64,000 nt of DNA from Bugula neritina. Lineage: Eukaryota; Animalia; Bryozoa. Shown here piece by piece: positions 13,731 to 40,647 of this stretch; positions within the stretch are counted from its first letter, which is position 1; every line of letters begins with the position of its first letter. Made by a program: the position numbers and the translations under genes. Where the stretch lies: NCBI GenBank assembly GCA_964035545.1, contig OZ037769.1, positions 11,128,633 through 11,192,632 on the forward strand. The letters are read 5' to 3'. The notes under the pieces are model-generated. The model saw only the letters and a program-made list of their open reading frames with translations. It was not told where the DNA came from and did not search any database.

Positions 13731-13956
13731 ATACTAAAATTAATGTCTATTATTAAGGCATTACTGTTTTTACCCTACACAAATCCGTGAAAAGTGAGCT
13801 ATTATTCCAGATAATTCATAGTAGATATTATAGCTACTATAAGCATGTTAACTATTTAGCAATCAAAATAAAAAATAGTGTCTAACTGGGAAGCCTCTAT
13901 CTGGGTACTTTAGAGTCGAGAACAGACTTTAGCACGTGATATTGTACCACATGTTG

Positions 13957-14339
13957 TACAGTAGCGCACACTACAGTAGCGCACACTACAGTAGCGCACA
14001 CTACAGTAGCGCACACTACAGTAGCGCACACTACAGTAGCGCACACTACAGTAGCGCACACTACAGTAGCGCACACTACAGTAGCGCACACTACAGTAGC
14101 GCACACTACAGTAGCGCACACTACAGTAGCGCACACTACAGTAGCGCACACTACAGTAGCGCACACTACAGTAGCGCACACTACAGTAGCGCACACTACA
14201 GTAGCGCACACTACAGTAGCGCACACTACAGTAGCGCACACTACAGTAGCGCACACTACAGTAGCGCACACTACAGTAGCACACACTACAGTAGCACACA
14301 CTACAGTAGCACACACTACAGTAGCACACACTACAGTAG
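13957..14339. repeat. 15-bp minisatellite (TACAGTAGCGCACAC) x ~25.5
   Basis: Near-perfect tandem array; the last ~4 units carry a G>A variant (GCACACA). Confidence 0.97.
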
Positions 14340-14375
14340 TACAATTTACTGTAAAGCATTCAGTAGCAACTGTAC

Positions 14376-14472
14376 CTTTATTACGGAGGGAGACGCTAGA
14401 AGTGTGTGAGGTTATTACTGTCAGGAAGTAATAGCAAGTAACAACCAGCAAGCACCTGATCAAGTGCTTCAT
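14376..14472 (-). CDS. Candidate alternative first (signal-peptide) exon of the nAChR gene
   Basis: MKHLIRCLLVVTCYYFLTVITSHTSSVSLRNK-G has a basic n-region and a hydrophobic h-region; phase-1 donor AAG|gtacag. Confidence 0.5.
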
Positions 14473-18821: not shown

Positions 18822-19388
18822 TGTAGTAAACTGTGGGTTCTGAATGCAACTAGTGCCTACATGCTCTAGAAAGAATAAGCCAAGTATTTGAGTACAAATG
18901 AGGATAACCTTTATTGTATCAGATACAGCTCATGTGGTCCTACTACCAGCGAGCTCCAGTAGTAGTCTGAAGCTACACTGGAAACTCGCCTGCTTTTATA
19001 CACAAGAATTCACATCTAGAATGTTCCAACAGACAAAAGAAAGTTAAGCTTGACAGTAACAAAAGAAAAATAGACAAAGGAGAATGAATAATTCAATAGG
19101 CCAAGAATTTAGCTATAATAACAACCTATTGAAGGCATTCATAAAAGCTACACAAATTTCCAGTATCAGTATTAATGCAAAACGATGAAATAGCAAAAAG
19201 GGAAAATAACTCTGGAAATGCGTATTTAATGAAAATTACATTATACTGAAAGCTTAATCACAATAATAAGGCATTAGAAAGCTAGTGCAACTTAGCTACA
19301 ATTACAGCATTCAAAATATACGCAACAGTAATTATAATACTGACACACGCAGTTACTTGAGAACAGTAGAGGATGAGAATCTATCACA
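18822..19388 (-). repeat. 3' LTR of Gypsy element 1
   Basis: 567-bp direct repeat of 25511-26077; TATAAAA (~18995-19000) and AATAAA (18910-18915) on the minus strand. Confidence 0.97.
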
Positions 19389-19574
19389 TTCTCCCCCCAT
19401 CGAAAAGCATCCCTTTTCGATAACAAAACAATGATTCCACACAAAAAAAATGAAACACAAACGTAGAAAAATATGCGGTTAACAGGAAGGTATTATGATT
19501 AATCACACGTAACACGAGAACATTTACAGCTCAGTTGGCTATTGCCAGCGGCCCCTGGTTGTCCGGTTTTATCA

Positions 19575-22500
19575 TTAGAGGTGGTGCACCAGGCTTTCTA
19601 TCTCTTCTGTACTTGGATCGAGGATATGGGACCAGGCCTCGATTGCGCTATCCAGGACGCACTCTCGGTAAGGAAGTGCCATACTCTGCCCGTGACGGGG
19701 CAATTGTGGGTGGGTTGGCTGAGTCTGTTCTTCTATCTGGTTGCCTGGTGCTCCAGATATCCAATACTGGCGGGCGACCAGGGCCCGAGGCATTGCCAGT
19801 ATTGGAGAGTCCTCTTCGTCTCTGCCTGCGAGGTGGTCGCCGTATAGAGTGCCCTGCTCCTCCCCAGCTATGAGCTGGAGCTCAACCGGTTCGGGGTCAG
19901 GGCCACTAACGCTGGCGGAACACACCTCGGAAGAGGGGGTGTCGTACTGCTGGCTGCGGGGAGCCGAAACAGGAGCTGGTGGGGGAGGGGAGTCGGATCG
20001 ACTGGCCTCCTCGGTATCCTTACGCTCCTCTGTTTGGGTATCTGGCGAGGTAACTCCCATAGCTGATGCTAGTGTCTGAATAACAGTGTTTAAATTATAC
20101 TTAGGGGTATCAGGATTAGAATTCAACTTGAGCTGTAACTCACGTGCTAGCTGTGTGAAATCTTCTTCTTGGTGGAATTCTCCAGGGTGATGGAGGGAAT
20201 TTCCAGCCAAGATGGGGTGGTCGTCCGTACTGGGTGGGTTGTCTTCATGAGGGGGCCACTCCAGGTGCCCTACAGCATAGTCTGCCAGATACCTGGGGGG
20301 TCTTCTTGACCGCTGGCTCCTCTCAATTGGAACAGGCACCTGTGGTGTTGGTGGCTCCTGGGCTACCCTAGTAGGGGGGTCCCCGCCTTCACCCAACACG
20401 GGGGTGGGGGTGTCCTCCCCCAGGGAGGGTGGTGGTCCTAGGGCTTCCCGCTGTTCCTGTTCCCGCTCTTCTCTCTGCTGTCGCTCCAGCTGCTCTATCA
20501 AGGCGGCCTGCTCCTGGTCCGACTCTCTGGGAACCACAATTTCCACCTCTGGGGGCTGGGTGGCCCGTCCTCGACGGTTGGGCTGGCGGTGGGGCTCCAG
20601 GAGGGGTGGAGCCTCACCCACTGCGTCTGGGCTGGCATGGTAAGGCTTCAGGCGCTGCTCGCTCTGGACCGAGACCTGTCCAGAGCGCTCCACACGGTAT
20701 GTGTGGTTGGGCAGCACCTCCACTACACAGTAGGGACCGACGAACTTGGGCTGAAGTTTAGCCGACTGTCCGCGTCGCCTACGGTAGCTCACCATCCAGA
20801 CCCAGTCTCCCACTTGGTACAACGGGGGCTCTTCCGAGTCCTCTGTGTGGGTCTGCCACTGCTGGGTACGCAGTGCATCATGAGCTTTGCCCATGATGTC
20901 TATCAGACCCTCCACATATTCGTGTACCGGTGACTCGGGGGCAGGAACATGGTATGTCAGGTGTTCCGGAACCCGCGTCTCTCGGCCTAGCATCAGGAAG
21001 TTTGGGGTCTCCTGCGTGGCGGAGTGTGGTGTGCTGCGGTAAGCCCGCATGATTTGCGGCAGCACCACGTCCCATTCTTCCTGACCTCGACCAAGGAGCA
21101 GGCTCCTGAGGGTGTCACCCAACATCCTGTTGTTCCGCTCGACGACTCCGTTCCCTTGCGGGTGATATGGGGTGGTCCGACTCTGGTTCACCCCCCATAT
21201 CCGGCAGAGGTCTCCCATGAGCTGGGACTGGAACTGGGCACCCTGGTCCGTATGTATCTGCTCGGGTAAACCGAGGTAACAGAACACATGTTGGTCCAGG
21301 GTCCGGGCCACCGTGGGGGCTGTTGCGTCTGGAATAGCCAGAGCATCTGCCCACCGGGTAAAGTGGTCCGTGAGCACCAGTATCCAGGTGTTCCCTCTGG
21401 CGGATAACGGCATAGGCCCGACGAGGTCTACCGCCACTACTTGCCACGGTCGACCAGCGTATAGCCGGCGTCGACCAGTGGTTTCCGTGGGGCGGCCATG
21501 CTTGCTAGCTTGGCAGACCTCGCATTGCCGTACCCGCAGTCGTACGTCCCGAGTCATTCCGGGCCAATACCAACGCAGCCGCAGACACCTGATGACCCGA
21601 CTGACTCCAGAATGAGCCTGCTTATGGGTGTCCCAGATCAGTTCCCGTCGGAGGGCGCGTGGACAGACGACGCGGTCCCTCTCTTGCTGACGGTTGTCTG
21701 CTGCTAACGTTATCATCAGGAGGCCATCAGGACTGACCTTGAGGGCATCCCAGCGACGACAGAGGAGTTGGAACTCAACGTCTCCCTGCCGCTGCTGTTC
21801 CTCGCTAGGTCGTCGGCCCTCCTTCTTGGCCCGGAAAATGTCCGCTACCGCGCCGGGTAGCGTCTCCTGGAGTCGGCACAGCTCCTTGACATTCTGGTAC
21901 AGAGTGGGGTTGGCGTGGAGCGCCTGGACGTCGTCTGAGTGGGTTTCGGTCCGAAGATGGCCGTGCTCCCACCGATAGACGGCGCCCTCCCCTAACTCTG
22001 TTTCCACGTCAAGGCGAGCGGGTCCCCCGTCCCGCTTCTCAATGTGCAGGCACTGCTTACAGTCTCCTACCGGCCGGCGGCTCATGCCGTCAGCGTTCCC
22101 GTGCTTCCGGCCAGCACGGTGTTCTATCCGGTAAGAGAACTCGGCAAGAATCTCTAGCCAACGAGCCACCTGGCTCGAGGGCTCTGCACGTTTACACAGC
22201 CATATCAGTGATGCATGGTCTGTTCGCAAACGGAACGTTCTCCCATACAGATATGGCCGAAAGTGCTTGACCGCCTTGACTACTGCTAGGAGTTCCTTCC
22301 TAGTGGTGCAGTAGTTCTTCTCGGCGGCCGCGAGAGTCTTGCTGTAGTAAGCTACGACCACCTCACTTCCACCCTGAACTTGAGACAGGACAGCTCCCAC
22401 GCTGTGGTCGCTGGCGTCAGTGTCCAGGATGTACTCTTGGGCTGGGTCAGGATACGCCAGAATTGGCGCCTCCATTAGCCGCTGCTTGAGGTGGTCAAAT

Positions 22501-24675
22501 GCCTGCTGCTCCTCCTGTGTCCACTGCCACCGGACCCCCTTTGCAGTCAGCCGATTTAACGGCTGAGCCACTCCTGCGAAGCCAGGTATGTACTGCCGGT
22601 AGTACCCTACTAGGCCCAGGAACGCGCGCAACTCAGGGAGGTCACGGGGGACAGTCCACTCCTTCACAGCCTGTACCTTCTCCGGGTCGGTAGCGACCCC
22701 GTCACGGCCAACCACATGGCCAAGGTACGTGACTTCCGGCTGCAGGAGTGCACACTTGGAGGGCTTTAGCTTCAGTCCAGCTGCCCGGAGACGGTCAAAG
22801 ACCTCCCGCAGACGACTGACATGGGTCGAGAAGTCTGGGGAGATGACAATGACATCGTCCAGATAGATGAGGAGGGTCTTCCAGTGTAACCCACTGAGGA
22901 CCTGCTCCATGAGCCGTTGGAAAGTTGCCGGGGCGGACGTTAATCCAAATGGCAGTACTTTCCACTTCCAGAGCCCGTCGCGGGTGATGAATGCTGCTTT
23001 ATCCTGGGCATCAGGACTGAGGGGTACTTGCCAGTACCCGCTAAGCAGATCCAAAGTACTGAAGTACTTGCTACCCGCGAGGGCATCTAGAGACTCATCT
23101 ATCCGTGGGAGAGGGTAGGCGTCCTGGATGGTAACACTGTTGAGTCTGCGGTAGTCCTTTGCAGAATCTCCAGCTACCATCCTTCTTCTTGACCAGGACT
23201 ACTGGAGAGCTCCACGCACCGTGGGCAGGCTCAATCAGATCCCGGTCGAGAAGATCCTGTACCTGTCGGCTCACCTCCTTCTCCTTCTCCGGGCCTAGAC
23301 GCCGGGTAGGCTGCCTGATGGGAGTGGTGCCGGCTGCCAGGGGTATCTCGTGGGAGATGACCTTGGTCAGCCCCATGTCTCCATCGCCACGACTGAAGAC
23401 ATCACTGTACTCCGCAAGTAGTTGAGCCAGTACTTGGCGTTCAGTACTACTTGTACAGTTTCCACACGCTCCATCATATAGGTCAGCCATATGCTCTGGG
23501 ACTGCTCCTCGTCTGGTGTGAGGGGGGTTCCCCTGGGTGTCGGCCACTGTCTCCAGTGCCGGACCCACATCCGCTTTCTGGATGGAGTGGTACTTCCCCA
23601 CCAGCGCTCCAGCCGATAATCGGACAGGTTCCGTGAAGGGGTTGATGCACTGCACGAGGAGCTCCTGCCGACAATCTAGCCGATTCAGGCTGTTTGCTAG
23701 TCGGATCGCTCCGTGCGTTCCCTCAACCACCCCCAGGCCGGCGATCCCCTTGCAGTTGACTCTGCAGCGAAGAGTCGCCTGGGATCTCCCCGGAACCGTG
23801 CAGTCCCGCACTACCTGGACTCCGCCCACCAAGGGCCTTCCGAACTTGTCGACGCAGACAAGCTCCTTCCCAGCCATCACCACCACTGACTTCTGGAAAT
23901 CCATGTGACACTGGTGTTTCTCCAGAAACGGCATTCCCAGGATGGCGTCCTCCTTCAGCTGGCTGACTATGAACGTCTCGTGAATTGCTTGATCACGGAC
24001 GCGTCCAGGTAGTGAAATGACGCCGTAGAAAGGAATGCATGATCCGTCCGCCAACGTACCATGCGCACCTTCATACGGCTCGAGGCTCGCCCGCTCTCGT
24101 GCACCAAGAGTGTCAAAGAGACGCCTACTCAGCAGGTTGGTAGTGCACCCAGTATCCAGTAGGAATGTGGCAGCTTTACCCGAAATCTTTCCGGGCAGGA
24201 AGTAGCTGCTTCCATACGGCTGGGTGCTCCTGGAGCGGTCAGTCTCTGGGGGAGACACAACTTGGGTCCGCACAGCGGGCCTCCTCTTCGTCTTAGAGAC
24301 AACGGGGGTTTTCTGAGGTCGGGAGGGTAGCTTGGGGTACTCTTGCGAGTAAGCTGAAACCTCCTCCACAACCTCCTCGGGCAACCCCGCGAACCGGTTC
24401 TGGAGTGGCTAGGCCGGAGGATCGGGCAGACCTTGCGGTCTCCGAGATCTCCGAGGTGCCTGCCATCCTGCTTCTTCTAGCTGCATCCGGGTCTCGAGTG
24501 ACACGGCCGGAGGATCGGGTAGACCTTGCGGTCTCCGAGGTCTCCGTGGCCTCTGCCACTCGGTATCGGCAGACCCTGTGGAGGTCTCTTCTTCTCCTCT
24601 TCGAGTCCTATCCCGGATGGGATTGGCGTGAGGCCCACGGTTGGCGGAAGTTACCGTGAGCCTTGGGTGTTTAAA
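19575..24675 (-). pseudogene. pol: Gypsy pol (protease, RT, RNase H, integrase), with one in-frame TAG and one frameshift
   Basis: PR LLDTGC; RT LDLLSGYWQ, PFGL, YLDD; RH TDASD; IN HKQAH..CEVC, DLVG, TDQG, VER. TAG at 24409-24411; frameshift at WRFC/DYRRLN (~23158). Confidence 0.93.
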
Positions 24676-25460
24676 GGCCCTTGGCCTCTAGGGCAGTGCC
24701 TCCTCACGTGCCCTTGCGCCCCGCACCCCCAACAGGTTAGCAGAGATGGGCGGACAGGGTTGTCCCGTGAACGGGGAGCCCGCCTATCCGCCTGTTCGTT
24801 CTGCAACTTCGTCACCGTAGCCTGCAGGCCTTTCATCATGTCCATTAACATGGTGAGCTGCGTCTGCTCGGGTGATTTAGTTGCAGCTGCTGCTACCTGT
24901 GGAGTTGGAAGTGGGGTGGTCTCCTCATGCTCCTCATACTGTTGACCTTGGCGGCCAGCCAGTGTCGCTGCAGGTCCGGGTGATTCACGCTCCGGAAGAA
25001 CGCGTTATAAACGAGGCGCTTTCGGTCGTCGCCAGTGGCATGACCGAAAGCAGCCTGAGCCAGGCGCTCTACCTCGTTAGCGTGATCTTCCAGAGGAGTC
25101 TTCCGGTCTCTCCTCATTATCTGCAAACGATCAGCTGCTTCTTCGGCTGATAGGCCGAACCGGGCTCTGAGAGCCCGCATGATGTGCTCTTCATCAGGCC
25201 CAAGAGCAAAGCTCTTGGCCCGGCCTGTCAGACAGGCCCGGAGTTGGAGGATGCCATTCAGCGATGGTGGCCACATCCTGGAACTCCCTGATAAATTGCT
25301 CTACGTCTCCTTCTCCTCCGAAATTCGGGGGCTGGAGGCGATACCTGTCACCAGGTGATGCCTGTCCTTGACCCCGCAATCCCTGGAGGGCTGTGACCAG
25401 CGCCTCAACCGTGAGGGCTGGTGGTGTTGCTGCCTCAGGGGCTGAGTCCCCTGGGGCCAT
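24651..25460 (-). pseudogene. gag: Gypsy gag, disrupted by two frame-shifting lesions
   Basis: Capsid-like NFGGEGDVEQFIREF..W / ILQLRACLTGRA segments and the zinc knuckle CWGCGAQGHVRRHC lie in alternating frames, with breaks at ~25253 and ~24935. Confidence 0.85.
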
Positions 25461-25490
25461 TGCGCGCCGCTCGGCAACTAGTTATTCGAA

Positions 25491-25509
25491 AATCCCACCG
25501 CTGCCACCA
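25491..25509 (-). other. Primer-binding site, tRNA-Leu
   Basis: TGGTGGCAGCGGTGGGATT is the complement of the eukaryotic tRNA-Leu(AAG/TAG) 3' end AATCCCACCGCTGCCA-CCA, 1 nt from the 5' LTR. Confidence 0.9.
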
Positions 25510-25510
25510 A

Positions 25511-26077
25511 TGTAGTAAACTGTGGGTTCTGAATGCAACTAGTGCCTACATGCTCTAGAAAGAATAAGCCAAGTATTTGAGTACAAATGAGGATAACCTT
25601 TATTGTATCAGATACAGCTCATGTGGTCCTACTACCAGCGAGCTCCAGTAGTAGTCTGAAGCTACACTGGAAACTCGCCTGCTTTTATACACAAGAATTC
25701 ACATCTAGAATGTTCCAACAGACAAAAGAAAGTTAAGCTTGACAGTAACAAAAGAAAAATAGACAAAGGAGAATGAATAATTCAATAGGCCAAGAATTTA
25801 GCTATAATAACAACCTATTGAAGGCATTCATAAAAGCTACACAAATTTCCAGTATCAGTATTAATGCAAAACGATGAAATAGCAAAAAGGGAAAATAACT
25901 CTGGAAATGCGTATTTAATGAAAATTACATTATACTGAAAGCTTAATCACAATAATAAGGCATTAGAAAGCTAGTGCAACTTAGCTACAATTACAGCATT
26001 CAAAATATACGCAACAGTAATTATAATACTGACACACGCAGTTACTTGAGAACAGTAGAGGATGAGAATCTATCACA
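25511..26077 (-). repeat. 5' LTR of Gypsy element 1
   Basis: 567-bp direct repeat of 18822-19388. Confidence 0.97.
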
Positions 26078-34149: not shown

Positions 34150-35761
34150 CTGTAAATCATTTGAAGAGATGGTAATTAACATGATCAGCTAGAAACAGCC
34201 TGTAAGTATCAAATATGTTTAAAATTAAATTTACAAAAAATGAAATATATTGATTGAAAAACCAAGCTTTTGACAGTAAAATAACATGGCAATCTTCAAA
34301 CTCAAGATATAGCTTTGAAAAAGGTAGTTTTATGAGATTTGACTCAGTTTTGTGACAAAAGCTCAGCTTTTATAACAAAATTTTCAACATGCTTCTTCAG
34401 CTAATTTCAGTGTAAAATTTTCAATCTGGTAAATATATTTAAATACCACCTAACCATTTTTCATATCATTAAAATTCTTGACATACATTTAGACTACATG
34501 TATGCTACACATGTAAAATACATGTATAGCATACATGTATTTCACATGTAGCCTGCAAAAGTTGCAGGCAATAAACCAGAGTTAACTAAAAACATGGAAG
34601 TAGTATAATACGGTGCCTTCCATTAAAATAGAGCTTGCAGAATCTGTAGTTTCAAATTTGTGGAAAAAGTTGTTTTTGATTTGTAAATTAAATGAGAAAA
34701 TAAACCCAGCATTGTGCAGGTGGCAGAAGAAGTAGGCATAAATTTATCTTTTCAAATAATTTGTTTTATGCCGACATTGGACAATAATAATATAGCGTAT
34801 GTTAAACAGTTGAATTTTTTAATTTAAAATTTATCCACTGAGTTTAGTATATCTTTAAATAATTAATATATATATATATAATTTTATGGGGATGTTAGTA
34901 AAGCACAAAAATAGAGTTAAGCTAACAATGTAATAGAAATCAGAAAAATTGGTCAGTAATTAAAAACCTATATTGCATTTCCTCATGTTTTAGTCTAAGT
35001 CAGAAATTACTATACTTAACAACAGAAACAACAAAAACGTAACAGATGCGATTTAATAGCAGTATATGATTACTATTTATTAGCATGCACCATGACAGCA
35101 TGCAATTTATTTCAACAACAAATGATTGTGACTACGTACTGCAGTTTACCCATGCATAGAACAGTTCAGTAGCACAGCATATTTAAATGCAGCTGTCAGA
35201 AGAAACAAATTCCATGGATAGATTGGCTCACCTGTTTGTTGCTCTAATGGAAACCTAGTAAACAGCAATTAAAACAGTAGTTAATGTGATAACACTTATA
35301 CTTACTTAGTCAGTTGATGTTGTCGCAGCACCAACCATGAATTTTCATTAAATTTAATAAGTTGTTGATTACTCCAACATAAAATCAACTGGGAGGTTTG
35401 TAGTTTCCGCTAAAAAGTCAATACCAGAACTCAAGACGAACTCAAAAAGGGTGAAAATCTTAGCCTGAAGGTGAATACTAAATATAAATTTATGCAAATT
35501 AAAATACAGTCACAATGTTAGCTGTACATAAATCTCTGTATTTACTCGTTAATAAATACTACATTAGTATGGCTGATGGAACTAAATTTTTTAGTAACAA
35601 ACTGCAAAACTGAAAGTAAGTGTTATTAGTAAAAGTATTATTGTACTTTGTAGTGGTGTTCCCTACAGATCCCAGCACTCATACTAAAAACCATTACTAT
35701 AACATTAACTGTATTACAACATACATGTAGTTATAATATATAGATTCATTATTTTAATAAT

Positions 35762-35971
35762 TGTAATGTGCATGACATTGCATCATGCAGTTGTGTAACC
35801 GTTTTGTAAATATTATTATAGCTGTTGTGTGGTTTTCCTTTATGTCCTAAATTCCTTCATCTTTGTGGTTTATATAATATATGTTGTCTGTCTTAGAAAT
35901 GTGTTCGTAGTGATTAGTTGTGCTTTCAAAATAAAGATATTTCAGTGAACTTTAAGTATAATATTATTACA
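35762..35971 (+). repeat. 5' LTR of element 2
   Basis: 210-bp direct repeat; contains TATATAA and AATAAA. Confidence 0.97.
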
Positions 35972-35983
35972 AGCTATTTCGGC
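35972..35983 (+). other. Non-canonical primer-binding site complementary to the 5' end of tRNA-Phe
   Basis: AGCTATTTCGGC is the reverse complement of GCCGAAATAGCT (tRNA-Phe(GAA) nt 1-12, recalled animal sequence) and directly abuts the LTR CA end. Confidence 0.7.
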
Positions 35984-36002
35984 GTTTATCAGTGGTAGAA
36001 AT

Positions 36003-36770
36003 ATGGCAGTCAGGGTGTCGGATCTAGTGAAAAATTATGAGGACAGTTCGGTTAGTGGAGACTTTACTGAGTGGTGTGAGAAGCTGGAGCTAGTAGCAAA
36101 GTTACAGAAAGTAGAAGATCTTGCATCGTTTCTGCCATTATTCTTGGCAGGTCCAGCGTTTGCTGTGTATAAACAGTTTTCAGAGGATGTTAAATCAGAC
36201 TTTCCGAAGTTAAAGGCTGAACTGATGACGTCATTCTGTGAGAGCAGTTACAGTGCTTACGATCAACTTAGATCAAGAAGTCTAAAAGAAGGTGAGGCTG
36301 TAGATGTCTATGTAGCTGACTTGAGAAGGCTAGTAACACTGATAGGTCAGAAAACTCCTGAGCCTTTACTGAAATGTGCATTTATTGCTGGTTTGCCAGT
36401 GGATGTTGCTACACAAATAAAATCTGTCGCTGCTGTTGAAAAGTTGAGCTTAGAAGAGTTAGTTGGTAGAGCTAGGATAATGTTATCAACAGCAACTGTA
36501 GACACTTTGACACCCTGTGCTGCTGGTAGGAATGTTACTAGAAAGTGTTTTAAATGTTTTTCACCACACCATTCAGCTTGGAGCTGTAACACTGAAAAAA
36601 GTCAAAATGGGAACATGAATGCTAATCGGAATGCCAATAATCATCAACAATACAGAAGATGGAACGTTCAGTGCTATACCTGTCAGGCTTGGGGGCATAT
36701 CAGTAGGAATTGCCCACAGGGAAACGGCGCTGGGGCAGTGTCAGCACCGGATGCTCACCCCAACAACTAA
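36003..36770 (+). CDS. gag: Gag polyprotein with two CCHC zinc knuckles (255 aa)
   Basis: CFKCFSPHHSAWSC and CYTCQAWGHISRNC; capsid-like GDFTEWCEKLELVA..LPLFLAGPAF. Confidence 0.92.
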   Translation: MAVRVSDLVKNYEDSSVSGDFTEWCEKLELVAKLQKVEDLASFLPLFLAGPAFAVYKQFSEDVKSDFPKLKAELMTSFCESSYSAYDQLRSRSLKEGEAVDVYVADLRRLVTLIGQKTPEPLLKCAFIAGLPVDVATQIKSVAAVEKLSLEELVGRARIMLSTATVDTLTPCAAGRNVTRKCFKCFSPHHSAWSCNTEKSQNGNMNANRNANNHQQYRRWNVQCYTCQAWGHISRNCPQGNGAGAVSAPDAHPNN

Positions 36771-39763
36771 ATTACAATTCGGTGCTACCACTAATAACTT
36801 TAAATGTAAACGGTGTGAGTATAAAAGCACTAGTAGATAGTGGTTGTGAACAATCAGTAGTTTTAGAAAGATTTTGTAATCAAATAGGTGTTGCACCATG
36901 TGGTCCTGAACGGAGGATTTTAATGCTAAATGGACAAATAACTAAATGTAGGGGTGAAGCTCAATTAGCAGTGCAGGTTAGAAATCGTCGTCTCTCTGTA
37001 AAATGTTTAATAGCTCCAATGTTAGTAGGTGGTTGCTCTTTAATTTTGGGAATGGATGCTATTAGCAAATTAGGTGGTGTGACAATTACTAGGAATAAGC
37101 AAGTGATGTTTCCTGCAGTTGAACCAACAACAGAAGTAGGTAAAGTTAGTGCTGTTAGTGTAGGTGTAGGAGTAGATAGATTTGATAAGACATTAACTAG
37201 TGATAGTAAAGGTGAACTTTTTGTTAGTGACATTGACTTTAATGCTAAATTTGATGGTAAAAAATGGACAGTGAGGTGGAAATGGGAAAATGGTGAGCCG
37301 ATATTACAGAATCAATGTGGTCAGTATGCTGTAAAAGCCAAATTCAAACAGAGTTACCATGAGCAGATTCAGCAATGGATTAATGATGGATGGCTACAAT
37401 TGTATGACAATAAATTGCATGGTACAGTCACTGGAATTGTACCATTGATGGCTGCTGCCCAGCCAAATAAACCAACCCAGGTCCGACCTGTTATGGATTA
37501 TAGTAGAGAACTCAACAAATACATCTACAGTAAGCCCAGTGGTGACACTGCCATTTGTCAGGATAAATTGAGGAAATGGAGGTTACTTGATGACAATGCC
37601 AGTTTGCTAGATCTAAGAAAAGCTTACTTACAACTTCATGTGGATAGTGATTTGCAAAAGTTCCAAGCTGTACGGTATGAGGGTAAGATCTATGTAATGA
37701 CTAGGTTAGGTTTTGGTTTAAATGTGGCGCCTAAAATCATGTCAAAAGTTTTATCTACAGTCCTGGCTCAAGATGACACTATACGCAAAGGTACTGATAG
37801 TTATATAGATGACATTATAGTTGATGAGACTGTTGTTTCGGTAGAAGTAGTTCGAAATCATTTGTTGAAGTTTGGTTTGGTAACTAAAGAACCAGAGAAA
37901 CTGAGTAATGCTAGAGTTTTAGGGCTAAGGGTTAGAGAGGGGTGGAGAGGTGGCATGTCATGTTATAGCTGGCAGCGTGATGGTGAGCTCCCATCTCTTG
38001 AGTCAAATAGCAACATAAGCAAGCGAGAGCTGTTTTCGGTGTGTGGTAAACTGACTGGACATTTTCCTGTAGCAGGGTGGCTTAGGGTAGCATGCAGTTT
38101 TATGAAAAGGTTAACGCAATCAGATATGTGGGATAGTGCTGTGTCTGACCACGTCCAAAAAATGTTGTTAGAGACATTAGATAGAGTTGCAAAATCTGAT
38201 CCTGTGAAAGGAAAGTGGCATGTGGCTAATACTGATACAGGCACCGTATGGTGTGATGCAAGCAGTTTGGCAATAGGGGTGTCTGTGCAAATAGATGGCC
38301 AGATAGTGGAGGATGCTTCATGGATGAGAAAACCCGATGATTGCACCCACATTAATGTAGCAGAGTTAGAAGCTGTGGTAAAAGGCCTAAATCTGGCTTT
38401 AAAATGGAATCTATGCAACATTGTAGTGAAAACCGATTCAATGTCAGTATTCAGGTGGGTCACATCTGTAATCAATGATAGTGTCAGACCAAAAGTTAAT
38501 GGCATGAATGAGATGATTGTGAAACGTAGGTTAGGTGTTATAGCAGAACTGATAGAAGAGTACAAGCTGTCATTAAAAATACATTTAGTGAAATCAGCTG
38601 AGAATTGGGCGGATGCTCTGACACGGGTGAGTTCAGCATGGCTTAGTAAGCGAATAACCTGTGCAAGTGCAGGTGTGACAACTCCTGATGTAGCTGACCT
38701 GAAGGATGAAATAGCCAAGCTGCATGGAATGCATCATTTGGGCATTGAAAGAACATTTTATTTAGCTAAATGTAAATTCGCAGGAGGCATAGACAAGGAG
38801 TTAGTTGAAAGAGTAGTTAAAGAATGTGCTGTGTGTAGGAGCATTGACCCTTCTCCAGTGCAGTGGGAAAGAGGAGTTCTGGAGGTCAATGAGAATTGGT
38901 ATAGGCTGGCAATGGATGTGAGTCATTATAATCGTGTACCATACTTGACTATTATCGACTGTGGCCCAAGTAGATTCGCTGTGTGGATAAAGTTGCAGAA
39001 TGAGACTGCTGACTCTGTGGTAAATCAGCTACTAAAGGTGTTTCAGCAACGTGGTCCACCGACAGAGTTACTGTCAGACAACGGACCATGTTTCAGAAGT
39101 GAAAGTTTGGAACAGCTACTTAGGCAATGGGATGTACAGCACATATTTAGCTGTGCTTATAGAGCATCTGGGAATGGTGTCATAGAGCGCAATCACAGGA
39201 CTATAAAAAGAATGGCAGCTCGAACTAGATCTTCAATAGAAAATATGGTATTTTGGTACAACAACACCCCAAATAGTAACAATGTAGTACCCTCACAAAG
39301 TTTATACAGCTATGATGTAAAGCTGCCTAAAGTATCACCATCAACAATAGGCAAGCCCACAGACATTACAAAAAACCCCTACAATGTAGGAGACAAAGTT
39401 TATGTAAAACCTGTGAATTCTAAATGCACAACTGCATGGCCACAGGGCATGATTACCAGGGTTGTGTCAAACACTGCGGTGATGGTAGATGGTATGACAC
39501 GACATATAAGTGATGTCCGACTGGCTAATGCAGGGAGCAGGGAAAGTGGTGACATTTCATCCAGTACAAAACAGCAATCTCAGGTACATGGAGACATTGA
39601 AATTAACCTGAGCCTAGATAATGCTGATGAGGATGCAGATGCAAATAGAGTTGTGGATGGTGAAAATGTTGAGGAAGGTGAAAGTGTAGACGAAGTGATT
39701 GATCGACCAGTAAGAGATAGACGGCCACCTAGGTGGTTAGCAGACTTTTATGTAGATGACTAA
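36719..39763 (+). CDS. pol: Pol polyprotein (PR, RT, RNase H, integrase), probably expressed by -1 frameshift
   Basis: ALVDSGC; RPVMDY, LDLRKAYLQL, RLGFGL, YIDD; CDAS, HINVAELEAV, TDS, NWADALTR; HGMHH..CAVC, MDV, SDNG, IER. It lies in the -1 frame relative to gag, with G GGA AAC at 36719-36725. Confidence 0.93.
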   Translation, partial: GKRRWGSVSTGCSPQQLNYNSVLPLITLNVNGVSIKALVDSGCEQSVVLERFCNQIGVAPCGPERRILMLNGQITKCRGEAQLAVQVRNRRLSVKCLIAPMLVGGCSLILGMDAISKLGGVTITRNKQVMFPAVEPTTEVGKVSAVSVGVGVDRFDKTLTSDSKGELFVSDIDFNAKFDGKKWTVRWKWENGEPILQNQCGQYAVKAKFKQSYHEQIQQWINDGWLQLYDNKLHGTVTGIVPLMAAAQPNKPTQVRPVMDYSRELNKYIYSKPSGDTAICQDKLRKWRLLDDNASLLDLRKAYLQLHVDSDLQKFQAVRYEGKIYVMTRLGFGLNVAPKIMSKVLSTVLAQDDTIRKGTDSYIDDIIVDETVVSVEVVRNHLLKFGLVTKEPEKLSNARVLGLRVREGWRGGMSCYSWQRDGELPSLESNSNISKRELFSVCGKLTGHFPVAGWLRVACSFMKRLTQSDMWDSAVSDHVQKMLLETLDRVAKSDPVKGKWHVANTDTGTVWCDASSLAIGVSVQIDGQIVEDASWMRKPDDCTHINVAELEAVVKGLNLALKWNLCNIVVKTDSMSVFRWVTSVINDSVRPKVNGMNEMIVKRRLGVIAELIEEYKLSLKIHLVKSAENWADALTRVSSAWLSKRITCASAGVTTPDVADLKDEIAKLHGMHHLGIERTFYLAKCKFAGGIDKELVERVVKECAVCRSIDPSPVQWERGVLEVNENWYRLAMDVSHYNRVPYLTIIDCGPSRFAVWIKLQNETADSVVNQLLKVFQQRGPPTELLSDNGPCFRSESLEQLLRQWDVQHIFSCAYRASGNGVIERNHRTIKRMAARTRSSIENMVFWYNNTPNSNNVVPSQSLYSYDVKLPKVSPSTIGKPTDITKNPYNVGDKVYVKPVNSKCTTAWPQGMITRVVSNTAVMVDGMTRHISDVRLANAGSRESGDISSSTKQQSQVHGDIEINLSLDNADEDADANRVVDGENVEEGESVDEVIDRPVRDRRPPRWLADFYVDD

Positions 39764-39821
39764 ACGTTTTTTCTTTTTGTTTTATTATATATCTGTTTGA
39801 TCTGATAAGATCAGGGGGAAA

Positions 39822-40031
39822 TGTAATGTGCATGACATTGCATCATGCAGTTGTGTAACCGTTTTGTAAATATTATTATAGCTGTTGTGTGGTTTTCCTT
39901 TATGTCCTAAATTCCTTCATCTTTGTGGTTTATATAATATATGTTGTCTGTCTTAGAAATGTGTTCGTAGTGATTAGTTGTGCTTTCAAAATAAAGATAT
40001 TTCAGTGAACTTTAAGTATAATATTATTACA
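39822..40031 (+). repeat. 3' LTR of element 2
   Basis: 210-bp direct repeat, identical by eye to the 5' LTR. Confidence 0.97.
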
Positions 40032-40647
40032 ATAATAACATTCATATAACATCAATTTTAATCATAATCATAATGATTTGCCAATAAGAAATATAATTAT
40101 ACTTCATGTTTATGGTATGTTAATACCTTCATAATGTCTAATTTTATCAAACTACTACAATTAGCAAATTAGTATTCATATTCACTCTAATATTCAGCAT
40201 TGAAAAAATAATGAGCTGCTATTTAATAATTACTATTAGTATTAGTAATTAAAATTAGTATCACTATCAGTATTACTACAACTATTAAAATAGTAATAGT
40301 AACACGAACGGAAATAGTACTACTATTACTGTACTATGTCTACTAGCATTAGAGTTAGTATTACTATTAGTATTACTATTAGTATTAGTATTAGCGTTAC
40401 AAAATCAAAATGAAAATGATTAAACTCCAACTGAAACTGAGTTTCGTAAAACGCTTGTTAATGTTATTAATTATTAGTGAGCTGTTGGGTGCAAATATTA
40501 GTAGTACTAAAGCTCTTACTCGGTTTCTTTCCAGTTATCACAAGCTTAAATATGACAATAATTATAGTAATTTTAGTTTTTGTAACATAAATTAAAATTT
40601 AATGTAAAGTTGCTGTTGAGCACACGCCAGGTTTGAACGAATCAGTC

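What the first reader, a model, noticed from the sequence alone, without database searches (positions are those of the whole stretch)
35962..36005. LTR retrotransposon whose primer-binding site matches the 5' end (nt 1-12) of tRNA-Phe
Seen: the 5' LTR boundary is fixed by the identical 3' LTR and the TSD, and the next 12 nt are AGCTATTTCGGC with no TGG. Established: LTR elements normally prime from the CCA 3' end of a tRNA. Known exceptions are Drosophila copia/Ty5 (tRNA-iMet cleaved in the anticodon arm) and Tf1-type self-priming. From memory, animal tRNA-Phe(GAA) begins GCCGAAAUAGCUCAG, whose first 12 nt are the exact complement, and the match stops exactly at tRNA position 1. The LTR contains no complement of this 12-mer, which argues against self-priming. 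Inference: minus-strand synthesis is primed by a ~10-12-nt 5' tRNA-Phe fragment, perhaps cut by the element's own RNase H. I do not know this priming mode to be described. The element is intact with identical LTRs, so it replicated recently with this site.
Basis: partly seen in the sequence, partly recalled or inferred. Interest (0 to 1): 0.9.

Follow-up and report, generated by a model that had tools for sequence, protein, structure and literature searches.

The report
Retrotransposon primer site matching tRNA-Phe 5' end
An intact, recently active LTR retrotransposon, and a whole animal-wide clade of its relatives, carry a primer-binding site that pairs with the first 12 bases of tRNA-Phe instead of a tRNA 3' end, which points to a way of starting reverse transcription that I could not find described.

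Summary
A 4,270-bp LTR retrotransposon lies at 35762-40031. It has identical 210-bp LTRs, a 5-bp target duplication and intact gag and pol. The 12 bases after its 5' LTR (35972-35983) are the exact complement of nt 1-12 of the host's own tRNA-Phe(GAA) genes.

- **Not chance.** The same 12-mer directly follows the LTR end in at least seven LTR families of this genome whose LTR ends and leaders share nothing else. These include a 335-bp miniature element.
- **Conserved across phyla.** Related elements in a second bryozoan, a leafhopper and a cephalopod carry the same 12-mer.
- **Sharp edges.** Conservation starts after the LTR's CA and stops at tRNA position 1.
- **Variants.** Relatives from unidentified hosts carry four 12-nt variants. 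Three differ only at tRNA nt 4-6, in the acceptor stem.
- **Same tRNA, other end.** More distant relatives (a sponge and metagenome contigs) carry the ordinary 18-nt site for the 3' end of tRNA-Phe.
- **Self-priming excluded.**

Best reading: a 12-nt 5' fragment of tRNA-Phe primes minus-strand synthesis. How it is cut is inferred, not shown. I found no description of this in the searchable literature. Other first-stage notes flagged the same site elsewhere in this genome.

The parts
35757..35761 (+). Left copy of the 5-bp target-site duplication (ATAAT)
   Evidence: It is identical to 40032-40036.
35762..35971 (+). 5' LTR, 210 bp, termini TGTAAT...ATTACA. A TATA-like box lies at 35871 and AATAAA at 35930.
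   Evidence: It is 210/210 identical to the 3' LTR. Contigs from probable RNA runs begin at about 35916-35944, and none covers 35700-35846. The promoter and poly(A) signals are read by eye and are inferred.
35972..35983 (+). Primer-binding site AGCTATTTCGGC, the exact complement of tRNA-Phe(GAA) nt 1-12
   Evidence: Host tRNA-Phe genes start with its complement. The same 12-mer follows the LTR end in at least seven host LTR families and in three other animal species. It shows no differences in the four public runs laid on it.
36003..36770 (+). gag ORF, 255 aa, with two CCHC zinc knuckles
   Evidence: Pfam zf-CCHC and Retrotrans_gag. CCHC motifs lie at aa 182 and 224.
36710..39763 (+). pol ORF, 1,017 aa, in the -1 frame relative to gag, domain order protease, RT, RNase H, integrase
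   Evidence: Pfam protease 30-119, RVT_1 297-371 (weak), DUF7047 438-495, RNase_H/RVT_3 512-600 and rve 735-818. YIDD lies at aa 365 and HHCC at aa 672. An AlphaFold model (pLDDT 90.5) shows RT followed by one RNase H.
39813..39821 (+). Polypurine tract AGGGGGAAA, abutting the 3' LTR
   Evidence: Read from the sequence. Its function is inferred from its position.
39822..40031 (+). 3' LTR, 210 bp
   Evidence: Identical to the 5' LTR.
40032..40036 (+). Right copy of the target-site duplication (ATAAT)

Best explanation
The 12 bases after the 5' LTR are a working primer-binding site that pairs with nt 1-12 of cytoplasmic tRNA-Phe(GAA).

Proposed course of events:
1. The 5' strand of the tRNA's acceptor stem, plus U8, A9 and the first three bases of the D stem, anneals to the genomic RNA.
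2. The tRNA is cut between U12 and C13.
3. The resulting 12-nt RNA, with a 3'-OH at U12, primes minus-strand strong-stop DNA, so U5 ends right at the CA.
4. Plus-strand strong-stop synthesis later copies the primer and runs off at its 5' end (G1). This rewrites exactly 12 nt of primer site in every cycle.

The run-off would explain why the conserved block is exactly 12 nt long, stays perfect across very diverged families, and stops at tRNA position 1.

Shown here: the complementarity, its position, its conservation, its specificity for tRNA-Phe, and the use of the same tRNA's 3' end by sister lineages.

Inferred: that the fragment is the primer (about 0.7). The cut might be made on the RNA:RNA duplex by the element's own RNase H, as in Tf1 (about 0.4), or the primer might be a pre-made host 5' tRNA fragment (about 0.25).
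For: Position and match:
- The LTR edge is fixed by the identical 3' LTR and the target duplication, and the 12-mer starts at the next base.
- The match to the host tRNA-Phe 5' end is exact.

Conservation within this genome:
- Five autonomous or unclassified families, with pol only 39-47% identical where a pol is present, carry the identical 12-mer after CA. So does a 335-bp miniature element that keeps little more than LTRs, this site and a polypurine tract (two internal types).
- The bases just before and after the block are unrelated between families, and all four bases occur at position +1.

Conservation in other hosts:
- The 12-mer is identical in Watersipora subatra (L031 4038-4049), Macrosteles quadrilineatus (L032 4986-4997) and Argonauta hians (L033 3976-3987).
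- Six further relatives from unidentified hosts have 12-nt sites right after the LTR's CA: AGCTATCGCGGC twice, AGCTATCACGGC twice, AGCTATCTAGGC once and AGCTATTTCGCA once. The first three variants differ only at tRNA nt 4-6; the fourth differs at nt 1-2.

Specificity for tRNA-Phe:
- Other host tRNA-like genes share nt 7-15, with 5' ends GCCCGGA, GCCGCCA, GCCTCTA and GCCAACA. Their complements are not enriched after CA.

Same tRNA in sister lineages:
- Relatives at 35-37% pol identity carry the ordinary 18-nt site for the tRNA-Phe 3' end. These are Sycon ciliatum (L108 3997-4014) and L100 (2971-2988).
- Together with L101, they form one clade with 100/98 support.

Activity and controls:
- About ten copies are 97-100% identical across the LTR, primer site and gag start.
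- Seventeen sites differ only by C-to-T at the CpG, which I read as decayed old copies.
- The classical Ty3/gypsy element in the same window has an ordinary 3'-end site one base after its LTR, so LTR edges in this host do mark primer sites.
- The 12-bp duplex is predicted at -18.7 kcal/mol.

Precedents, from my own knowledge: Tf1 uses an 11-nt primer cut by RNase H on an RNA duplex (Levin 1995, 1996). Copia uses a cleaved 5' fragment of tRNA-iMet (Kikuchi et al. 1986).
Against: - No cDNA intermediate, primer-tagged read or small-RNA library was available. The public runs were held only as contigs.
- The hosts of the variant sites are unknown, so co-variation with host tRNA-Phe is suggested by the pattern but not shown.
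- A cut in the D stem at U12/C13 has no known enzyme.
- The Argonauta copy has CAAG, not CA, before the 12-mer.
- The direction of the 3'-to-5' switch is unrooted, and one long-branch 5'-type row (L103) sits next to the 3'-type clade.
- tRNA-Phe of Watersipora, Macrosteles and Argonauta was not read here. Identity of nt 1-12 in human and Drosophila is taken from primer and probe sequences in PMC10505166 and PMC7038984.
Confidence: 0.7

Rival explanations
1. The site pairs with the tRNA-Phe 5' end, but the primer is a 5' tRNA fragment made beforehand by a host nuclease and then packaged. It is not cut on the template by the element's RNase H.
For: Short 5' tRNA fragments cut in the D loop or arm are common in animals (reviews listed). 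Nothing in the sequence data separates this from cleavage on the template.
Against: The described 5' fragments are mostly 14 nt or longer. An overhanging 3' end would not prime. The exact 12-nt register in every family and host fits a cut measured on the duplex (inference).
Confidence: 0.25
2. The 12-mer is a relic or a non-priming cis signal. It could be the far end of an old read-through copy of the whole tRNA-Phe primer, kept as a packaging or annealing anchor, while something else primes.
For: Complete read-through of a 3'-annealed tRNA-Phe would place exactly this 12-mer at the distal end of the insert (my own reasoning). Sister lineages do use the tRNA-Phe 3' end.
Against: - No other candidate site abuts the LTR.
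- The leader between the 12-mer and the gag ATG is only 0-21 nt and is unrelated between families.
- A relic would not stay perfect across pol divergence of 35-47%, or be kept by miniature elements.
Confidence: 0.07
3. Tf1-type self-priming: the 5' end of the element's own transcript folds back on the site.
For: The primer length resembles Tf1's 11 nt.
Against: - The LTR has no sense-strand complement of the site at up to 3 mismatches.
- The U5 to gag region does not fold better than shuffles, z = -0.66.
- Families with unrelated LTRs share the same site, which equals a host tRNA end.
Confidence: 0.02
4. Priming occurs from the iMet-like TGGTAGAAATATGG about 21 nt downstream, or from some other RNA.
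For: The motif starts with TGGTAG, like sites for the tRNA-iMet 3' end.
Against: - It occurs only in the window's own family. Sister families have other leaders, some only 0-4 nt long.
- A primer there would place the U5 edge downstream of where the 3' LTR and the target duplication put it.
Confidence: 0.01

Closest known systems
Tf1/sushi-type self-priming (Schizosaccharomyces pombe Tf1)
   Same: The primer is a short (11-12 nt) 5'-terminal RNA paired to a site that abuts U5. Its 3'-OH must be made by an endonucleolytic cut at the end of an RNA:RNA duplex. Plus-strand copying runs off at the primer's 5' end.
   Different: In Tf1 the primer is the element's own transcript. Here the paired RNA is a host tRNA acting in trans, and no complement exists in the LTR. 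No chromodomain was found.
Hemivirus-type priming (Drosophila copia, yeast Ty5): a cleaved 5' fragment of tRNA-iMet
   Same: A host tRNA is used through something other than its CCA end, and it must be cleaved to give the priming 3'-OH.
   Different: Copia pairs with the anticodon-arm region (up to about nt 39) of tRNA-iMet, and its pol order is integrase before RT. Here nt 1-12 of tRNA-Phe are paired, the cut would lie in the D stem, and the pol order is protease, RT, RNase H, integrase.
Canonical priming from the tRNA-Phe 3' end
   Same: The same tRNA species is used. The nearest sister lineages of this clade carry the standard 18-nt site TGGTGCCGAAACCCGGGA (L108 from Sycon, and L100).
   Different: The opposite strand of the acceptor stem is paired. 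The site is 12 nt, not 18, has no TGG, and has no spacer after CA.
Ty3/gypsy (Metaviridae) LTR retrotransposons
   Same: Gag with CCHC knuckles, pol order protease, RT, RNase H, integrase, TG...CA LTRs, and a 5-bp target duplication.
   Different: - Pfam signature: weak RVT_1, no RT_RNaseH families, and PF23088 (DUF7047) plus cellular-type RNase_H/RVT_3 hits.
- The classical Ty3/gypsy element in the same window gives the standard set.
- No RT in the PDB, Ty3 included, is found by sequence.
- The element is compact, about 4.3 kb.
Odin retrotransposons (Wang and Han 2022, PMC9040795)
   Same: Compact gag-pol elements of invertebrates, with an integrase close to retroviral ones.
   Different: - Odin has a tether plus a second RNase H. 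The model here shows RT followed directly by one RNase H.
- That screen of 3,624 animal genomes reported Odin only in sea anemones, whereas this clade is in bryozoans, an insect, a cephalopod and a sponge.
- The paper does not mention primer sites.

Membership tests
LTR retrotransposon (order Ortervirales), autonomous | Two LTRs with TG...CA ends, a target-site duplication, a polypurine tract, and gag and pol | tested here: met
Ty3/gypsy (Metaviridae) | Pol domain order protease, RT, RNase H, integrase | tested here: met
   Pfam positions and structure model.
Ty3/gypsy (Metaviridae) | RT/RNase H groups with Ty3/gypsy in a phylogeny or by family models | tested here: inconclusive
   - RVT_1 scores below its cut-off and there is no RT_RNaseH or RT_RNaseH_2 hit.
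- The neighbouring classical element scores 108-130 bits on these models.
- Foldseek gives only generic retroviral and caulimoviral RTs.
- No reference set was available for a tree.
Canonical tRNA 3'-end priming | A site starting TGG within 0-3 nt of the LTR, complementary to the last 8-18 nt of a tRNA including CCA | tested here: not met
   The sequence after the LTR is AGCTATTTCGGC. The canonical Phe site occurs once, partially, in the genome.
Tf1/sushi self-priming | The site is complementary to the first 11 nt or so of the element's own transcript (R region of the LTR) | tested here: not met
   No sense-strand match in the LTR at up to 3 mismatches.
Hemivirus-type half-tRNA priming | The site is complementary to an internal (anticodon-arm) stretch of tRNA-iMet | tested here: not met
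   The match is to nt 1-12 of tRNA-Phe.
Hemivirus-type half-tRNA priming | Ty1/copia pol order (integrase before RT) | tested here: not met
   Integrase is last.
Odin / retrovirus-like dual RNase H elements | A tether (degenerate RNase H) between RT and a second RNase H | tested here: not met
   In the model the thumb helices (residues 289-346 of the modelled part) are followed directly by the RNase H fold.
Proposed kind: priming from the tRNA 5' end | A 12-nt site abutting the LTR that equals the complement of nt 1-12 of a host tRNA | tested here: met
Proposed kind: priming from the tRNA 5' end | The site co-varies with the 5' end of the host's tRNA-Phe | tested here: inconclusive
   Four variants were found. 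Three are confined to acceptor-stem positions nt 4-6, and one (L102) differs at nt 1-2. Their hosts are unidentified.
Proposed kind: priming from the tRNA 5' end | Strong-stop cDNA is covalently joined to a 12-nt tRNA-Phe 5' fragment | not testable with these tools
   Only contig-level public runs were on hand.

The most novel reading that the evidence does not exclude
A large, animal-wide clade of compact LTR retrotransposons starts reverse transcription from a 12-nt fragment cut from the extreme 5' end of tRNA-Phe. The clade evolved this from ordinary priming by the 3' end of the same tRNA. The cut is made on the RNA:RNA duplex by the element's RNase H, and run-off copying of the primer resets the site in each cycle. 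This would be a third tRNA-dependent priming mode, beside the 3'-CCA and copia-type modes. Current annotation tools miss it, because they search only for tRNA 3' ends.
Probability: 0.55. Interest if true: 0.85.

Novelty: new variant of a known kind. Interest (0 to 1): 0.8.

Why it matters
- **A new route to a primer.** Primer choice is a defining step of retroelement replication. Only three routes are established: the tRNA 3' end, an internally cleaved tRNA-iMet, and self-priming. A clade that pairs with the tRNA 5' end would add a fourth.
- **A model for primer-site change.** Sister lineages use the two strands of one acceptor stem, which gives a natural system for studying how a primer site changes.
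- **Annotation.** Programs that score primer sites against tRNA 3' ends will report these elements, and the abundant miniature elements that depend on them, as lacking a site.
- **Small-RNA biology.** tRNA-fragment defences aimed at primer sites would here involve the other end of the tRNA.

Tried and rejected
- **Self-priming:** no complement of the site in the LTR, and no significant fold of the U5 to gag region.
- **Downstream iMet-like motif:** not conserved outside the family.
- **Odin membership:** the architecture and host range do not fit.
- **BEL/Pao and Ty1/copia:** no Peptidase_A17 or RVT_2 hits, and the domain order is wrong for copia.
- **Troyka:** described with unique termini and target duplications (PMC12440569). 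Here the ends are TG...CA with a 5-bp duplication.
- **Naming the clade:** attempts through PDB sequence search, the protein atlas and Foldseek gave only generic RT and integrase matches.
- **Hosts of the variant sites:** cluster look-up and a second homologue search returned only unnamed metagenome and Logan contigs.
- **Literature:**
  - Sequence-word searches for the variant 12-mers found nothing useful.
  - Searches for the 12-mer itself found no retrotransposon context.
  - Nor did searches for primer-site terms with tRNA-Phe, half-tRNA, Mag, SURL, tRNA fragments or '5 end of tRNA'.
  - The library holds open-access papers only.
- **Public runs:** held only as contigs. They show that a 95-96% identical relative is present in probable RNA runs from within the LTR onward, but they give no ends, strand or cDNA intermediates.
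- **Variant GCCGCGATAGCT in this genome:** three stray sites, none after an LTR.
- **Duplex folding:** folding the whole tRNA against the leader gave an uninterpretable global pairing.

Full report
**1. The observation**

A direct repeat of 210 bp brackets 35762-40031. The two LTRs are identical over all 210 bases. They begin TGTAAT and end ATTACA, and they are flanked by ATAAT on both sides. A polypurine run, AGGGGGAAA, abuts the 3' LTR.

Between the LTRs lie two ORFs.
- gag (36003-36770) has two CCHC knuckles.
- pol (36710-39763) is in the -1 frame, with the order protease, RT, RNase H, integrase.

The 12 bases after the 5' LTR (35972-35983) read AGCTATTTCGGC, and no TGG follows the LTR.

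**2. The host tRNA**

The window's genome (216 Mb) was searched for the complement, GCCGAAATAGCT. There were 126 hits, against 0-3 for the reversed control. ARAGORN calls tRNA-Phe(GAA) genes at five of the fetched places, and each gene starts exactly at the 12-mer.

Primer and probe sequences in two papers show the same first 12 nt in human and Drosophila tRNA-Phe (PMC10505166 and PMC7038984).

**3. Other elements in the same genome**

Among 84 distinct contexts of the 12-mer, 5 are tRNA-Phe genes, 72 follow a CA (or TA) dinucleotide as at an LTR end, and 7 are stray. The LTR-type contexts fall into at least seven families whose LTR ends and leaders are otherwise unrelated.
- Three further autonomous families have pol 47%, 40% and 39% identical to the window's (L098, L094, L095).
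- Two families have no detectable pol (L096, L097).
- A very abundant miniature element consists of two 107-bp LTRs and a 121-bp internal part. That part begins with the same 12-mer and ends in a purine run, and the element is bounded by 5-bp duplications (L027 AAGTG, L062 CATTT).

The base after the 12-mer is a, c, g or t in different families. Information content drops to near zero on both sides of 'ACA plus 12-mer'.

Specificity was tested with a degenerate search for CA + AGCTAT + NNN + GGC.
- It gave 181 sites against 8 for the control.
- Of the first 100 listed, 55 are the exact Phe type.
- Another 17 differ only by C-to-T at the CpG, which I read as decay of dead copies.
- The remaining 28 scatter over many triplets.
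- Other host tRNA-like genes share nt 7-15 (5' ends GCCCGGA, GCCGCCA, GCCTCTA, GCCAACA). Their complements are not enriched.

The site is therefore specific for tRNA-Phe.

**4. An internal control**

The window holds a second intact LTR element on the minus strand at 18822-26077, with identical 567-bp LTRs. It gives the classical Ty3/gypsy Pfam set. One base after its 5' LTR it has an ordinary TGG-initiated site for a tRNA 3' end. In this host, then, the base after the LTR does mark the primer site in the usual way.

**5. Relatives elsewhere**

Pol has hundreds of homologues, all carrying Pfam PF23088. Most sit on contigs of about 4 kb from metagenomes and public runs. The named ones come from the bryozoan Watersipora subatra, the leafhopper Macrosteles quadrilineatus, the cephalopod Argonauta hians and the sponge Sycon ciliatum.

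I fetched the DNA around fourteen of them.
- **Identical 12-mer.** Watersipora (L031 4038-4049), Macrosteles (L032 4986-4997) and Argonauta (L033 3976-3987) have it directly after their own, unrelated LTRs.
- **Variants.** Six elements from unidentified hosts have 12-nt sites in the same place after CA:
  - AGCTATCGCGGC in L103 and L104;
  - AGCTATCACGGC in L111 and L112, the latter from a marine metagenome;
  - AGCTATCTAGGC in L109;
  - AGCTATTTCGCA in L102.
- **Where they differ.** The first three variants differ from the standard site only at the positions that pair with tRNA nt 4-6. This is the middle of the acceptor stem, where tRNA-Phe differs between lineages. The part pairing with nt 7-12 and nt 1-3 is kept. 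L102 differs at nt 1-2 instead.
- **Limit.** The hosts could not be named, so the match to their tRNA-Phe is not verified.

**6. Sister lineages use the other end of the same tRNA**

Three more distant relatives (35-37% pol identity) have a canonical site.
- Sycon carries TGGTGCCGAAACCCGGGA two bases after its LTR (L108 3997-4014).
- L100 carries the same 18-mer (2971-2988).
- L101 carries a related TGGTGACGAAACCCGC.

In a maximum-likelihood tree of 14 pol sequences, these three form one clade with 100/98 support and the 5'-type rows lie on the other side. One long-branch 5'-type row (L103) sits next to them, and the root is unknown. The canonical Phe site is practically absent from the window's genome: one partial site.

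The lineage as a whole is therefore tied to tRNA-Phe, and part of it pairs with the opposite strand of the acceptor stem.

**7. Alternatives**

- **Self-priming.** It is excluded. The LTR has no sense-strand complement of the site at up to 3 mismatches, and the region does not fold better than shuffles. Families with unrelated LTRs could not share one self-complementary site that also happens to equal a tRNA end.
- **The iMet-like motif 21 nt downstream.** It is private to the window's family. Some relatives have only 0-4 nt between the site and the gag ATG.
- **A relic of a read-through tRNA copy.** This could explain the origin of the 12-mer. It does not explain perfect conservation across 35-47% pol identity, or retention by miniature elements.

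**8. Mechanism**

By the standard logic of LTR replication, the primer's 3' end pairs with the first base after U5. The priming 3'-OH must therefore be on U12 of tRNA-Phe.

An intact tRNA has no end there, so a cut between U12 and C13 is required. It could be made on the 12-bp RNA:RNA duplex (predicted -18.7 kcal/mol) by the element's RNase H, as shown for the 11-nt primer of Tf1. Or it could be made beforehand by a host nuclease. Both options are inferences.

Plus-strand strong-stop synthesis would then copy the 12-nt primer and run off at G1. This accounts for the sharp edge of conservation at tRNA position 1 and for the constancy of the site.

**9. Activity**

About ten loci are 97-100% identical to the window's LTR, primer site and gag start, and LTR-only hits lie about 4 kb from several of them.

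Contigs from probable RNA runs cover a 95-96% identical relative from about 35916-35944 through the site into gag and pol. They do not cover the upstream part of the LTR. That fits a transcript starting inside the LTR, but contigs prove neither ends nor expression. The 12-mer showed no difference in any run.

**10. Classification**

The element has the Ty3/gypsy gene order, but not its usual family-model signature (compared).

An AlphaFold model of the RT-RNase H part (pLDDT 90.5) shows fingers, palm and thumb followed by a single RNase H with no tether. Foldseek returns only generic retroviral and caulimoviral RTs. It is therefore not an Odin element. I leave the clade unnamed.

The host is probably a bryozoan. 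The nearest named homologues are from Watersipora, and runs labelled 'symbiont metagenome' hold the element. This is an inference.

**11. Novelty**

Ten full-text searches, including searches for the 12-mer itself, found no paper that links this sequence or a tRNA 5' end to a retrotransposon primer site. Subscription literature was not searchable, so an older description cannot be excluded.

Three other first-stage notes flag the same site elsewhere in this genome. One of them lies at the copy I read as L072.

Noticed in passing
L027 (G000:C2:17738906-17741917) and L062 (G000:C4:21831156-21831967); dozens more, for example L024, L019, L012: A 335-bp miniature LTR element: two 107-bp LTRs (TGTAGTG...TTTTACA) and a 121-bp internal part with the tRNA-Phe 5'-type site and a purine tract. 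It has 5-bp target duplications and often forms 228-bp tandem arrays. ARAGORN calls the core of each LTR a tRNA-Cys(GCA)-like or untyped tRNA. An LTR carrying a possible pol III promoter recalls the plant Cassandra elements, whose LTRs hold 5S genes.
   Followed up: partly
L074, L075 (G000:C5:8190078-8190889 and 8359996-8360807) and L091 (G000:C6:10317497-10318308): Chimeras joined exactly at the 12-mer. In L074 and L075, the LTR of an autonomous family (as in L029 and L098) is followed by the internal part of the miniature element. In L091, a tRNA-like LTR is followed by a gag-like leader. This suggests template switching or recombination at the shared primer site.
   Followed up: no
window 18822-26077, minus strand: A second intact LTR retrotransposon: identical 567-bp LTRs, 4-bp duplication ATAC, and the classical Ty3/gypsy Pfam set. 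A canonical TGG-initiated site for a tRNA 3' end lies one base after the 5' LTR. From memory it matches tRNA-Leu(AAG); I did not check this against host genes.
   Followed up: partly
L033 3970-3987 and 8020-8040 (Argonauta hians): In this copy the LTR ends CAAG rather than CA before the 12-mer. The 5-bp duplication TCAGT fits only if the extra AG is part of the integrated 3' LTR. This may be an unprocessed end or a family-specific U5 end.
   Followed up: no
G000, 17 of the first 100 sites listed: LTR-adjacent sites reading AGCTATTTTGGC, which is the primer site with C-to-T at its only CpG. This is consistent with methylation-driven decay of dead copies.
   Followed up: no
Homologue lists: Hundreds of clade members are assembled as stand-alone contigs of about 4 kb in metagenomes and public runs. 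Several are circularly permuted, with one collapsed LTR (L104, L109). Some are annotated by their source as bacterial 'transposase InsO' or 'ribonuclease HI'.
   Followed up: no
window 13867-14436: A near-perfect 15-bp tandem array of about 38 units overlaps a 191-aa ORF on the minus strand (13897-14472).
   Followed up: no
L032 8489-8628 (Macrosteles): The 3' LTR of the leafhopper copy matches only the first 140 bp of the roughly 210-bp 5' LTR and then diverges. The copy is truncated or rearranged at its 3' end.
   Followed up: no
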